Of a stretch of DNA of 64,000 nt, positions 59,480 to 63,859 are shown piece by piece. A program made the translations under genes and the position numbers. Within the stretch, counting starts at the first letter, position 1. The number at the start of each line of letters is the position of its first letter. This DNA comes from Trichoplax adhaerens (taxonomy: Eukaryota > Animalia > Placozoa). A model generated the notes under the pieces. The model had not been told where the DNA came from and ran no database searches. It saw only the letters and a program-made list of their open reading frames with translations. The stretch is from positions 558,001-622,000 of the forward strand of contig NW_002060967.1 of the NCBI RefSeq assembly GCF_000150275.1. Direction: 5' to 3'.

Positions 59480-62400
59480 TTACATTATTTCCGATTGATG
59501 CTTAAGGGTGTTCATTTTGAAGTCTTGAAGCTAAATTAAATAGTATACATTTAATGTTACTGAAAATATGAAACATATCTTTAATTGCTGATGCATGTGC
59601 ATGTTCAACCATTAATAAAATTATTCACAAATAGATTACGCATAAGTGCAATTTACTTTCTCAACTGAGATAATGTTAGCTATCAAAAATATTGGTAATA
59701 AAATAGTCTACAAATACGTCAAAGTTTAAATTTAGTACTAAATGATATTGTCAAAGTTTGTATTTTCAAACACGGCATTTTGTAAAATCAATAGGTATTT
59801 CATGTGCTGTTACAAAACAGCTTTGCAATAAGATAACGTAATGCACGATCAATCAGTCCATTCCCTGAACCACGCATCAGGGAGCAGTATCTACTCTTTC
59901 AGGAACTCTTTCCCTATACTAGTAGACTACTAAAAGACTTAGACTCCTCGTATCTTACGTTAAACACTAATCATAAGAACTCACTTCATTATATAATTTA
60001 TCGTATTTATATACTCTTTTACAATAGCAAAGACATCCTGGTTAGTATTATTAACATTGAAACCTGATAATGAATCAAAAGCTAATTTTATCTACTGCTC
60101 CATAATGTAGACAACAGTATTTACGAACATAGACATCGAATGACTAATACAAAATTGTCAGATTACAATATGTCCTATCTCGGAACATTTCTACGATAAT
60201 CTACGATCTACTATTAGTAAATTACAATCACAGTGATTTGAATGGTAAGAAGATTATTCTCACTTCCCTAATTAAGCTACTAGTTTCAGTAGGCCGTATA
60301 TATATATCACCATAAAAGCTAGTGCTATATTTAAATATCACATATCTAAATTAGAAACTCATCATATAAGGGTAAATCAACAAAATTATCCTAACATAGA
60401 TGTCTCTACTATAATCTCGATATTACAGTGTATAACACTGTAACATGCGCCTAACCACATTTTAACATTTAAGAATACACCATGTTTATATATTGATTTC
60501 ACCACATAAAAAATTTCATTATTAGGAGAAAGATCAGACAGAATTTGCTGAAATTTGCAGATGATTGCACTAAACTTCTTAAATATTGATTCAATTTTGT
60601 AACAACTTACCCAACCTATAATTTCCAACCAGGAGTCGTTATGACCAGTTGATTTATGACTTCTATCGCGTGTACTGTGTTTGCTTACAACGTTACTCTC
60701 TATTTTTGACTGGCAATATGTGATGATCTCATCACATAGTAGTAGAATACAATTCAAATCCTCCATCGATGCAGCTGCGAAACTGGGAAATTGCATATTG
60801 TCACCAAATATTTTGGCGGATGTAAAGTCGCCTAGTAGGCACTTAATCAGACCCTGTTGATTGAAACATTAGAAATAGGGCTTAAATCGAAAGTATAGTT
60901 AATTACGCTAAGTTAAATAATCTCAGAATTTTAAATAATTAAACGCGCTTTAAGCTAAAATTTACTCTAATTGTGCTAAGTTAGAATCCAATACAAAAGC
61001 GTAGCATTCAACGTACATTACGAAATTAAATACCATCAAAAGAAAAAAATATCATCTTCATAATCTTATTGCAGGCTATCAGTCATGCGTATTATTTACT
61101 AGTATTACCGCTTAACTTGAATAAATACTAAATATGTCCGAAATTAAAACAAGAGCTACTAAGAGCACAAATTATTAACTCTTAGTAGCGTAAAACTCAA
61201 CACCAAATAACAAATTATAAATACGTGAGTAATGTGAAAGTTCAACAGATGTTGATTCCCCAAATCATGATTACAATTTAAGGATGTGCGTTGATGCGTA
61301 CCGATACTTATCACATCTGTACGCAGTAAAAACAACCTACAACATGAACTTTAAATAAATTAGACTATTCAAGCAGTTCTAATAGTATTCATGTTACATT
61401 TTATATATTAATTAATGCATAGTCTTTTACTAACGTACCGTACCTCATCAATGATAACAATAAATATTGTGCGAGAGTTGATATTGCCGTGGATAATTAA
61501 ATTAGCTCGCAACGATTTTACAGCTTTTAAAAGATCATTAAAAATTTGTTTAATAGATTCTGGAGTCAAGTATTCAGATTTGTTACACAGTAATTCGCGT
61601 AGAGTGGCTATTTCTTCACCAGGCAGCGAGTAACATACCATTCTGAAAAAATGTTTCATGTGCATGCAAGTAAATTTTGACACGCATTATTTTCTCTAGA
61701 TATTTATAATTGGTATTATACAAGCTTATTTTTTTAAACGTGCTATTTACAGCTATCTATAAGTAAAGTTTATTACCTATGGCACTATTCCGGTTTGACT
61801 ATAAAATAATTATTGTATAAATAGATTATGTGATAACTACTTACCGTTTACTTTGTAATTTTGCTGGAATCTTGAATCTATGGCTTTCTATTTTAAACTT
61901 AGGACGCTCTAATGCCCAAAGGCATTGTAGTATGTTCTCTACTCGCATTTCTTGTAGTTTAATATGACAATAAAACTGCTTCTCCTTCTTCCAATCTCCA
62001 GCCTCTTTCTCACTGTAATACTTGAGCCATGCAGTTGTGCTTTCTTTATTGCTCTGATAGATGAGTTTAACTTTGAAATAGTTCTGTGTGGTAACAGAAG
62101 TTGAAGAATTTACCCCTTGGCTTGGTATTTTTTTATGCTACGTCAACAATTCTATGAATTTTGTCCCTTAGTGAAGTTATCTGATGCAACTTTATACCAT
62201 AAGAGCAATATTGAATTTAATAACTTCTATGCAATTAACATGTAATATTTCCGCACTATTAACTTACAGATGAAACAAAATCTGCTGCAGCAGTCCGAGC
62301 AATAGATATTTTTTCAAGGCATTTCGTCTTCTGATCTAATAAGAAAGACAACATGATATAAAAGATAACTTTAACATTCCATACTCACAAATCATATGAA

Positions 62401-63859
62401 TAAGAATACCATTGTGCAATGTTTCGCATTCTATATTCATGTTGTCAAGGTGCATCGTAAAACTCGACTAAATCCAATTACTTCTTGTGATAGCGAGCGA
62501 TACTTAATTTATCTTTCAAAAAGACTCAATAATCGTCTTCTTCACGATATTTCAGTTCTTGTAAGTATAAAACTACTGGTGCAATAGAAACTGCATTTTG
62601 CATGATAATTATGAGTGATCATAAATTCTGCCTTCGTACTATTGTTTACAGTTTTGTGTATTAGCTATTGGAATAGTAAGCTATCGTGAAAATGAAAGTA
62701 AGTTAATGATTTAGATATCTATTGTATAAATGGAAGTGTACCTTCGAAACATGTCACAGTTAATATTGAGCGTTTCAGATAATCTTACTCCAACTTACTT
62801 CCAATTTGATAGTAAGACCGATCTTGAAGTAAATCTTTACTACTGGCCCATTTTACCTTATCACAGCAGTTTCCAAGAGATCTTACAATTCTAATAGAAC
62901 GATCTAAAAATGTTTGAGTGAACATCGTGTAAATTATTGGATTAATACACGAATTAAGCGGTAAAGATAAGACAGCAATAAATGGCAATACATGAGTGTC
63001 CAACTCAGAGTTGATTAAGCCGATAATCAGAATAGCATAAAACGGAAGCCAGCATATAAGATCAGTAGCTACAATAGTAATCATCTTTGCTACAATTATT
63101 TTATCTAATCTGGAAATTTGAACATTTGCCTCGCGACGAGATTTTGCTAATGTAATAATAATGCCAGAATACATAATGCTGATGATAGCCCAAGCCAAGA
63201 ATGTTACACCGCAATAACATAAAAGCCATAATAATAGATAAGGATTGCTAATATTACCGGGCAAACAAGCCCCATTAACGCTATGCAAACGATTATTAGG
63301 TGTCTGATTAAAACCATAAATTATTGGTAAACCTGTAAATACGGCAGAAATTGCCCAAACAATAAGGAAGATATTGAATATCTGTCTGTAGGAAAGACGA
63401 TAATTTTGAAACGGATAGACTAAATATAAGTAACGATCCAGTGTTATAAGAAAAATGACCAATGTCGACACGAAAGTAGAAATTGAGACTAGAAAAGAAC
63501 ATATTGAGCAAACTGTACTCCGTAACCAAACTTCGTGGTATTCAGCATAGACTCCAGAAAAGTAGATGTTGGCTGATGCGATAGTTGTCAAGTAAATACC
63601 CATCAGCAAATCTGCTGTTGACAGATTAATAATTAAAGATCTGACAATAATATAGTCCTTGTTTTTCCCATTTGTATGCCATATAATTGAAACGATATTG
63701 CCAATGATGGACAGGACTCCAATTAGCCAAATGAAAACTCGTAGTACTCCATGTGATAAAATATCTGAGCAAGTTGATAAACTGAACTGATCTGGTAAAG
63801 GCTGGCAAATAGTTACAGATCTTCCAACGTAACAACATAGATAATCGAGAGTTGAAAGT
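59480..63859 (-). CDS. Type C LGR (RXFP/GRL101-like) GPCR with C-terminal TGF-beta-receptor-like pseudokinase domain; 5' (ectodomain) exons lie beyond the window
   Basis: Exon 62799-63859 encodes hinge YLCCYV..CQPLPDQFSLSTCSDIL..LRVFIW..GN, NLSTADLLMGIY, TLDRY, TDLICWLP and LPLNSCINPIIY. Phase-compatible exons 62268-62335, 61845-62137, 61444-61642 and 60611-60853 carry AWLK, WKKE, ENIL, HGNINSR and LGDFT. The last exon 59480-59530 is tentative; read-through would stop at 60386. Confidence 0.8.

What the first reader, a model, noticed from the sequence alone, without database searches (positions are those of the whole stretch)
59480..63859. GPCR-kinase chimera: RXFP/GRL101-type LGR spliced in frame to a TGF-beta/BMP type II receptor-like kinase domain
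Seen: the 7TM exon ends at a consensus donor (GGA A|GTAAGT, 62799). Four downstream exons with canonical GT-AG sites keep frame (junction phases 1,0,2,0) with no stop: NQKTKCLEK...; ...STTAWLKYYSEKEAGDWKKEKQFYCHIKLQEMRVENILQCLWA...; ...IATLRELL...IKQIFNDLLKAVKSLRANLIIHGNINSRTIFIVIIDE; GLIKCLLGDFTSAKIFG.... Established: TGF-beta-family receptor kinases have the signature VAVKIF....SWxxExxI[YF]....L[KR]HENILQF, and BMPR2 has HRDLNSRNVLV...CVISDFG. The W-x-x-E alphaC motif, ENILQ, NSR and CxxxDF all recur here in order. Characterised animal LGRs have no kinase domain. Inference: one receptor coupling an LRR/7TM module to an STKR-derived cytoplasmic domain, a possible physical link between G-protein and TGF-beta/BMP-type signalling. 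I know of no functional description but cannot exclude automated database annotations.
Basis: partly seen in the sequence, partly recalled or inferred. Interest (0 to 1): 0.92.

Follow-up and report, generated by a model that had tools for sequence, protein, structure and literature searches.

The report
Placozoan LRR-GPCR with fused pseudokinase tail
This Trichoplax adhaerens gene most likely encodes a leucine-rich-repeat G-protein-coupled receptor whose cytoplasmic end carries a catalytically dead kinase-like domain, one of about 16 such genes in this genome, an architecture I found in no paper on animal rhodopsin-type receptors.

Summary
On the minus strand, a rhodopsin-type 7TM exon (63859-62800) ends at a phase-1 GTAAGT donor. 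Five downstream exons follow in frame, the last ending at 59480.

Public gene models already join them. JGI TRIADDRAFT_61684 joins part of this locus. The Trichoplax sp. H2 MAKER model RDD36152.1 joins all of it, about 99% identical.

The genome holds 16 loci where a close 7TM paralog (44-64% identity by match) is followed on the same strand by the tail exons. No more distant LGR (39% or less) has them. The tail exons are under purifying selection (dN/dS 0.2-0.45).

The tail is kinase-like:
- Family profile against PDB sequences: E = 3.9e-4 and 1.5e-5.
- ESM Atlas model of the H2 ortholog: TM 0.60-0.66 to kinases.
- Foldseek: all 50 rows shown are kinases.

It is a pseudokinase. HRD reads HGN, the catalytic Asn is lost, the DFG Asp is not conserved, there is no Gly-rich loop, and the C-lobe is truncated.

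The TGF-beta type II link is weak. Only the N-lobe matches TGFBR2 (E = 0.19-0.3).

I could not obtain direct RNA evidence. Verdict: real, largely as read, a new variant of GPCR-kinase fusions.

The parts
62800..63859 (-). Hinge plus 7TM exon of the LGR, with helix 8 and a CC motif. DRY, CWLP and NPIIY are intact. It ends at a phase-1 donor GGAA|GTAAGT.
   Evidence: Pfam 7tm_1 E = 3e-28. Exon mapped from P0038.
62268..62335 (-). Linker exon e2 (starts NQKTKCLEK). Phase-1 acceptor, phase-0 donor.
   Evidence: Used by both P0001 and P0038. The EKISI motif is shared with the neighbouring paralog.
61845..62083 (-). Exon e3, the kinase-like N-lobe (beta3 Lys in WLKYY, alphaC W..E, ENIL).
   Evidence: 16 paralogous copies. 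N-lobe profile hits only TGFBR2, E = 0.19.
61444..61642 (-). Exon e4: hinge, alphaD, alphaE and a degenerate catalytic loop (HGN in place of HRD).
   Evidence: Pfam Pkinase E = 0.079 for the exon alone. e4 profile against PDB: CDKL3 E = 1.5e-5 and many kinases below 1e-3. About 20 copies in the genome.
60611..60853 (-). Exon e5: the DFG-equivalent (GDFT), a short activation segment and one long helix. It ends W|GTAAGT, a donor conserved in the closest paralogs.
59480..59530 (-). Terminal exon e6 of the H2 model (16 codons plus TAA). This is the least certain part, because C-terminal exons differ among paralog models.
   Evidence: An alternative in-frame read-through after 60611 is noted.

Best explanation
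Window 63859-59480 (minus strand) is the 3' two-thirds of one Trichoplax adhaerens gene. Its LRR exons lie beyond the window end. The protein has an extracellular leucine-rich-repeat domain, a canonical rhodopsin-type 7TM core and, after helix 8 and a roughly 45-residue linker, a cytoplasmic kinase-like domain of about 230 residues. That domain is a pseudokinase. It belongs to a placozoan-specific subfamily of about 16 LGR-pseudokinase genes. Shown: exon structure, splice compatibility, family-wide linkage, purifying selection, kinase fold, loss of catalytic residues, and an intact DRY/CWxP/NPxxY set. Inferred: the receptor still couples to G proteins. The tethered dead kinase would then act as a scaffold or allosteric module that docks or regulates a partner, for example an active kinase. 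Known pseudokinases such as HER3, KSR, JAK JH2 and the kinase-homology domain of receptor guanylyl cyclases work this way (established knowledge, not tested here). Its N-lobe may descend from a TGF-beta type II receptor kinase, at odds of about one in three.
For: Splicing: the donor sits at 62800 in phase 1 and all downstream junctions are GT-AG and in frame. A phase-1 GT[AG]AGT donor just before the read-through stop recurs in most paralogs. No initiator Met is available in e2 or e3 before the alphaC-beta4 region. Linkage: at 16 loci on 8 contigs, a 7TM exon close to this one (44-64% identity by match) is followed on the same strand, 0.7-4 kb away, by e3 and e4, and by e5 at most loci. None of the LGR 7TM exons at 39% identity or less has them. 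Gene models: JGI TRIADDRAFT_61684 (this locus) and TRIADDRAFT_60495 are fusions. So are the H2 MAKER models RDD36152.1 (ortholog of this gene, complete tail), RDD39592.1 (896 aa from Met), RDD45091.1 (1129 aa) and RDD42511.1. MAKER used RNA-seq evidence in that study (PMC6057997). The one JGI tail-only model traced to its locus (TRIADDRAFT_61685) and a partial H2 tail-only model (RDD39140.1) lie where the 7TM exon is frameshifted or stop-ridden in this assembly. Coding: dN/dS is 0.2-0.45. Kinase fold: the A3 profile against PDB gave kinases in all 60 best rows, best E = 3.9e-4. The e4 profile gave E = 1.5e-5. Pfam scores are sub-threshold but in register: Pkinase E = 0.0032 on P0038 and PK_Tyr_Ser-Thr E = 2.4e-4 on P0018. 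The AF2 model has pLDDT 74. Foldseek rows shown are all kinases at prob 0.92-1.00, and VIA gives Z of 9-10. The ESM Atlas model of P0038 residues 395-641 has TM 0.60-0.66 to kinase clusters, and feature scores reach 0.97. Pseudokinase: HRD reads HG[NS], the catalytic Asn is lost, DFG reads G[DKNEV]F, and no GxGxxG is present.
Against: All joins therefore rest on gene prediction and comparative logic. Several JGI models stop at the 7TM exon (for example TRIADDRAFT_61227), and two public models are tail-only. Tandem co-duplication of two adjacent genes could also give collinear loci. Pfam does not reach its gathering score for any tail, and finds nothing in P0002 or P0004. Global TM scores from my own AF2 model are low, at 0.3-0.38. 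The 3' terminal exon differs among paralog models. The scaffold function is pure inference.
Confidence: 0.78

Rival explanations
1. There are two neighbouring genes. An ordinary LGR terminates at the 62785 stop, and a separate small cytosolic pseudokinase gene lies downstream. The pair was duplicated together many times.
For: The 7TM frame stops four codons after the donor. Some JGI models are 7TM-only (P0013), and two public models are tail-only (P0002 from JGI, P0004 from H2). Tandem duplication copies neighbours together.
Against: e2 and e3 have no start codon before the middle of the N-lobe. Phase-1 donors are conserved at the 7TM exon end. Linkage holds at all 16 loci, on 8 contigs, at 30-40% tail identity. 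Both tail-only models sit behind broken 7TM exons in this assembly. The H2 ortholog of the locus behind TRIADDRAFT_61685 is a complete 896-aa fusion. All four H2 evidence-based models at intact loci are fusions.
Confidence: 0.14
2. The tail is a catalytically competent TGF-beta/BMP type II receptor-type kinase, so the receptor directly phosphorylates type I receptors or Smad-pathway components.
For: The N-lobe profile and the single sequence hit only TGFBR2 for that lobe. The beta3 Lys is mostly conserved and the alphaC Glu is invariant. This copy keeps an Asp in GDFT.
Against: The HRD Asp and the catalytic Asn are absent in every copy. The DFG Asp is absent in most copies. There is no glycine-rich loop, and the C-lobe is cut down to one long helix plus short helices. 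The TGFBR2 E-values are only 0.19-0.3. The 'NSR' and 'CxxxDF' matches are private to this copy. Trichoplax's own Activin_recp and GS loci score 6 bits or less with the family profiles.
Confidence: 0.04
3. The tail exons are decaying remnants of an old fusion and are no longer translated or functional.
For: Some loci are clearly broken: L024 and L016 carry stops, and the remnants at C1385 and C1404 lack a 7TM exon.
Against: Frames are open and dN/dS is 0.2-0.45 across intact copies, including pairs with dS of about 0.4. The motifs Y24, W32, E35 and N51 are invariant across 17 N-lobes.
Confidence: 0.04

Closest known systems
GPCR-kinase fusions ('GPCR-bigrams'): GPCR-TKL/K and GPCR-TK of choanoflagellates, GPCR-TK of sponges, GPCR-TKL and GPCR-PIPK of oomycetes and amoebozoans (PMC12716839)
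   Same: A 7TM receptor with a kinase-type domain at the cytoplasmic C-terminus in one polypeptide. None has been characterised functionally.
   Different: Here the 7TM is a bona fide metazoan rhodopsin-family LGR with an LRR ectodomain, and the kinase domain is degenerate and truncated. That paper found GPCR-TKs in sponges but in no other metazoan lineage, with the Trichoplax proteome among its data. The fusion here is therefore probably independent.
Leucine-rich-repeat GPCRs (LGRs), including the 41 Trichoplax-specific LGRs of Hauser et al. 2022 (PMC9545775)
   Same: LRR ectodomain, Cys-rich hinge and a rhodopsin-type 7TM with DRY, CWxP and NPxxY. Automated names are 'GRL101-like' and 'relaxin receptor 2'.
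   Different: Described LGRs end in a short tail. The word 'kinase' does not occur in that review. No LDLa module was found, so this is not a GRL101 or type C LGR in the strict sense.
TGF-beta receptor type II kinase domain (TGFBR2; PDB 5e8v, 7dv6, 8ygz)
   Same: N-lobe register and motifs: a K-x-[FY] beta3 strand, W-x-x-E-K in alphaC, then [FY], then ENIL. It is the only PDB hit for the N-lobe profile.
   Different: E-values are only 0.19-0.3. There is no Activin_recp ectodomain. The catalytic and activation segments are not receptor-kinase-like, and the C-lobe is truncated.
Receptor-tethered pseudokinases (kinase-homology domain of receptor guanylyl cyclases, JAK JH2, HER3, plant NFR5)
   Same: A dead kinase domain attached to a receptor. 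The HGN catalytic loop resembles the guanylyl-cyclase homology domain (from memory, a lead only). NFR5 is among the VIA matches (Z 9.4, 20% identity).
   Different: None of these is attached to a 7TM receptor. No guanylyl-cyclase domain appeared among the best 60 PDB rows.

Membership tests
Rhodopsin-family GPCR (Pfam 7tm_1) | Seven-helix core scoring above the Pfam gathering threshold, with DRY, CWxP and NPxxY microswitches | tested here: met
   99.5 bits against a cut-off of 30.5. LDRY, CWLP and NPIIY are read in the translation.
LGR (leucine-rich-repeat GPCR) | LRR ectodomain encoded upstream of the 7TM in the same gene | tested here: met
   LRR-type exons lie 1.3-9.6 kb upstream, outside the window. 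Models of two paralogs score LRR_8 at E = 4e-24 (P0039) and 8e-38 (P0041). The model of this gene's H2 ortholog is N-terminally partial.
GRL101 / type C LGR | N-terminal LDLa module(s) | tested here: not met
   No LDLa motif appears in the six frames of the 10 kb upstream. Pfam finds no LDLa in the complete 896-aa paralog model P0039.
Protein kinase superfamily (fold) | Bilobal kinase fold, with sequence-profile homology in the correct register | tested here: met
   Profile against PDB at E = 3.9e-4 and 1.5e-5. Atlas model TM 0.60-0.66 over 188-200 residues. Foldseek and VIA rows shown are all kinases or kinase-fold proteins.
Protein kinase domain (Pfam PF00069 / PF07714 membership) | Score above the Pfam gathering threshold | tested here: not met
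   Best scores are 17.3 bits (cut-off 31.7) on P0038 and 20.9 bits (cut-off 23.1) on P0018. P0002 and P0004 give no hit.
Active protein kinase | Gly-rich loop, beta3 Lys, alphaC Glu, HRD Asp, catalytic Asn, DFG Asp | tested here: not met
   The Lys is mostly kept and the Glu is kept. HRD reads HG[NS], the Asn is lost, DFG reads G[DKNEV]F and no GxGxxG is present.
TGF-beta/BMP receptor serine/threonine kinases | Kinase domain clustering with this receptor family. Type I receptors also carry a GS box, and all carry an Activin_recp ectodomain. | tested here: inconclusive
   TGFBR2 is the only hit for the N-lobe, at E = 0.19-0.3. The C-lobe matches other kinases. No GS or Activin_recp domain appears in the models. 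Trichoplax's own receptor-kinase loci score 6 bits or less. No kinome-wide tree could be built.
GPCR-kinase fusion | 7TM and kinase-type domain on one mRNA and one polypeptide | tested here: inconclusive
   Six public gene models and the splice logic say yes. Transcript reads could not be examined.

The most novel reading that the evidence does not exclude
Placozoans built a receptor class of their own in which ligand binding to an LGR is transmitted both to G proteins and, through a covalently tethered TGFBR2-derived pseudokinase, to a partner kinase such as a TGF-beta type I receptor. This would be a direct hard-wired bridge between GPCR and receptor-kinase signalling in an early-branching animal.
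Probability: 0.1. Interest if true: 0.85.

Novelty: new variant of a known kind. Interest (0 to 1): 0.62.

Why it matters
GPCR-kinase fusions have been reported in oomycetes, amoebozoans, choanoflagellates and sponges. They were explicitly not found in other animals (PMC12716839), and none has been studied functionally. The review that counted 46 Trichoplax LGRs does not mention a kinase-like tail (PMC9545775).

A family of about 16 LGR-pseudokinase genes under purifying selection, in an animal with a handful of cell types, shows that the architecture arose again inside Metazoa on a classical hormone-receptor scaffold. It also offers a tractable system for asking what a kinase-type module does at the C-terminus of a GPCR.

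The limits are real. The domain is dead as an enzyme. The family seems confined to placozoans. The gene models already sit unremarked in GenBank and UniProt. Transcript proof is still missing.

Tried and rejected
I did not resend or trim the request, so read laying was unusable and I have no RNA evidence.

2. Pfam on single exons gave only a weak Pkinase hit on e4.

3. The search for homologous proteins with the tail region, and with P0002, returned only the query itself.

4. I hoped the Logan and ENA contigs carrying relatives would be cDNA. They are genomic fragments, probably of another placozoan, with introns, and too short to link the 7TM exon to the tail.

5. The first AF2 model, from 10 rows, was poor (pLDDT 58) and gave only weak kinase matches. 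The second, from 33 rows, was usable.

6. The own-genome search with the N-lobe profile found no true kinase. Its one extra hit, at C1412:807528, is a Lys/Glu-rich stretch and not a kinase.

7. The Trichoplax Activin_recp and GS loci, and seven other kinase loci, showed no special affinity between the receptor kinases and the family profiles.

8. The TALE-repeat proteins at the top are a repeat artefact, with no stretch passing on its own.

9. A regex search for LDLa modules found nothing.

10. No paper mentions TRIADDRAFT_61684, 61685 or 60495.

Exons were searched one by one by reference, and the public models P0001 and P0038 stood in for the joined product.

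Full report
IDENTITY OF THE SEQUENCE

The window is G000:C1390:558001-622000 of a 105.6-Mb genome in 1414 contigs. 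The protein encoded at the locus is identical to TRIADDRAFT_61684 of Trichoplax adhaerens (P0001). The organism is therefore the placozoan T. adhaerens.

THE OBSERVATION

On the minus strand, an exon from 63859 to 62800 encodes a Cys-rich hinge, seven helices, helix 8 and a CC motif.
- Pfam 7tm_1 scores 99.5 bits, E = 3e-28.
- The LDRY, CWLP and NPIIY switches are intact.
- The exon ends ...GGAA|GTAAGT in phase 1. Unspliced, the frame stops four codons later at 62785.

Two public gene models confirm the joins.
- The JGI model P0001 splices the 7TM exon to e2 and e3, then ends in a tiny alternative exon.
- The MAKER model of the sister lineage Trichoplax sp. H2, RDD36152.1 (P0038, 641 aa, about 99% identical), runs 7TM-e2-e3-e4-e5-e6.

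The 18 codons between them are in frame either way, and the inner site has the better pyrimidine tract. P0038 adds a terminal exon at 59530-59480.

I did not build the joined protein myself. Exons were searched one at a time by reference, and these public models served for whole-tail analyses.

ONE GENE OR TWO

Own-genome searches with each exon and a tblastn map give 16 loci on 8 contigs. At each, a 7TM exon close to this one (44-64% identity by match) is followed on the same strand, 0.7-4 kb downstream, by e3 and e4, and by e5 at most loci. None of the many LGR 7TM exons at 39% identity or less has such exons.

A few further 7TM pieces lie on tiny contigs or are degenerate and cannot be judged. 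Four tail-only remnants exist at C1385, C1404, C1266 and a second copy on C1288.

Further points favour one gene.
- Most paralogs carry a phase-1 GT[AG]AGT donor shortly before the read-through stop of the 7TM exon.
- e2 and e3 have no Met before the middle of the N-lobe.
- The W|GTAAGT donor at the end of e5 is conserved in the nearest paralogs.
- Tail exons evolve under purifying selection. dN/dS is 0.24-0.45 for young pairs, 0.30-0.33 at dS of about 0.4, and 0.2-0.5 for old pairs.

Gene models are mixed in the 2008 JGI set. Two are fusions (61684 and 60495), several are 7TM-only, and some are tail-only. TRIADDRAFT_61685, the one I traced to its locus, lies behind a frameshifted 7TM exon in this assembly. 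A partial H2 model, RDD39140.1, is also tail-only and corresponds to a locus whose 7TM exon carries stops here.

In the evidence-based MAKER annotation of H2 (PMC6057997), all four intact loci I could trace are fusions:
- RDD36152.1, the ortholog of this gene.
- RDD39592.1, 896 aa from the initiator Met, the ortholog of the locus that JGI modelled as tail-only TRIADDRAFT_61685.
- RDD45091.1, 1129 aa.
- RDD42511.1, 747 aa.

I put the single-gene reading at about 0.8.

WHAT THE TAIL IS

Sequence evidence:
- Pfam does not reach its threshold, but it aligns in the correct register. Pkinase positions 15-156 match P0038 at E = 0.0032, and PK_Tyr_Ser-Thr matches P0018 and P0041 at E of about 3e-4.
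- UniProt already names two tail-only models 'Protein kinase domain-containing protein'.
- A 33-row family profile searched against PDB sequences returned 402 matches at E of 10 or less. The best 60 are all kinases, best E = 3.9e-4.
- The e4 profile alone gives CDKL3 at E = 1.5e-5 and dozens of kinases below 1e-3, always at alphaD, alphaE and the catalytic loop.

Structure evidence:
- An AF2 model of the neighbouring paralog's tail has pLDDT 74.
- Foldseek rows for it are all kinases, prob 0.92-1.00, E from 8.8e-4, but global TM is only 0.3-0.38.
- VIA-align gives Z of 9-10 over 100-118 residues.
- The ESM Atlas's own model of P0038 residues 395-641 aligns to kinase clusters at TM 0.60-0.66 over 188-200 residues. 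Language-model features give kinase clusters at 0.97.

The fold is kinase-like. The enzyme is not there. Across 17 N-lobes and 14 catalytic-loop exons:
- The beta3 Lys is mostly kept and the alphaC Glu is invariant.
- There is no glycine-rich loop.
- HRD reads HG[NS] (once YGN, once HRH).
- The catalytic Asn is gone.
- The DFG Asp is D, K, N, E or V.

After the DFG-equivalent, the models show one long helix and one or two short ones in place of alphaF to alphaI. The C-lobe is therefore truncated. This agrees with the scan's sister note s1-735031.

THE TGF-BETA / BMP TYPE II CLAIM

The family-wide N-lobe signature is real. It runs K-x-Y, ten residues, W-x-x-E, x-x-F-Y, then N-I. Y24, W32, E35 and N51 are invariant.

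The N-lobe profile hits only three PDB sequences at E of 10 or less. All three are TGFBR2, aligned in register with beta3 and alphaC, but at E = 0.19. The single sequence gives E = 0.3, and the whole-tail profile gives TGFBR2 E = 0.023, aligned over the N-lobe and hinge.

Against the claim:
- The rest of the domain matches MAPKAPK3, CDKL3, MST, PAK, IRE1, RAF/KSR and TBK1 better.
- Trichoplax's own Activin_recp and GS loci show no affinity to the family profiles.

I rate descent from a type II receptor kinase at roughly one in three. A working link to TGF-beta signalling is unsupported.

From memory, HGN is also the catalytic-loop motif of the kinase-homology domain of receptor guanylyl cyclases. 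No such protein appeared in the best 60 rows, so this remains a lead only.

THE RECEPTOR PART

LRR-type exons lie upstream of the window end. Models of two paralogs carry many LRRs. No LDLa module was found, so 'GRL101-type' is only an automated name. The gene probably belongs to the 41 Trichoplax-specific LGRs of Hauser et al. 2022, a review in which the word 'kinase' does not occur (PMC9545775).

MECHANISM (INFERRED)

The topology places the pseudokinase in the cytoplasm, about 45 residues beyond helix 8. The intact microswitches argue for normal G-protein coupling. The dead, conserved kinase module most likely works as a docking or allosteric element, as other pseudokinases do. Nothing here identifies its partner.

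NOVELTY

Garcia De Las Bayonas and colleagues (eLife 2025, PMC12716839) list GPCR-kinase fusions in oomycetes, amoebozoans, choanoflagellates and sponges. They state that GPCR-TKs were not recovered in other metazoan lineages and that none is characterised. Trichoplax was in their data. No paper mentions these loci.

The architecture is thus a new variant of a known kind. It is present only as unremarked automated annotation.

Noticed in passing
G000:C1390:634500-644500 (locus L021), about 13-20 kb beyond the window's high end: The nearest paralog lies in tandem on the same strand. In this assembly its 7TM exon is split into two frames (matches 2-160 and 168-349), and JGI modelled only the tail (TRIADDRAFT_61685). 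The H2 ortholog RDD39592.1 is an intact 896-aa LRR-7TM-tail protein. The break may be an assembly error or a strain-specific pseudogene.
   Followed up: partly
window 60386-60610, minus strand: The frame stays open past the e5 donor for 74 more codons. It contains QQILSDL, which resembles KQILADL in the terminal exon of paralog model P0007. The first 63 nt after the donor are an in-frame stretch ending in tttcag. The true 3' end of the gene may differ from the H2 model's e6 exon.
   Followed up: partly
window about 61797-61775, minus strand (inside intron 3): The JGI model TRIADDRAFT_61684 ends in a 7-codon mini-exon here (QTGIVP plus stop) and does not continue to e4. This is probably a prediction artefact.
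   Followed up: no
G000:C1385:243000-244200, C1404:1078770-1080750, C1288:11786-12900, C1266:10739-10924: Four extra copies of tail exons have no recognisable intact 7TM exon upstream. One carries stops and two adjoin assembly gaps. They look like remnants or assembly fragments of the family.
   Followed up: partly
Loci L025-L028 and L032-L034 (Logan contigs of runs SRR30664515-17): Short genomic contigs carry 7TM exons 62-63% identical to this gene's. Separate contigs carry e3-like and e4-like exons 150-220 nt apart. They probably come from another placozoan. The tail family therefore appears to extend beyond T. adhaerens and H2, although 7TM-tail linkage could not be checked on such short contigs.
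   Followed up: partly
Alignment A5 against PDB: The e4 profile gives very low whole-sequence E-values for TALE repeat proteins (AvrBs3, Hax3), with no single stretch passing. This is an additive artefact of the LTPE..V..I motif against 34-residue repeats, not homology.
   Followed up: yes
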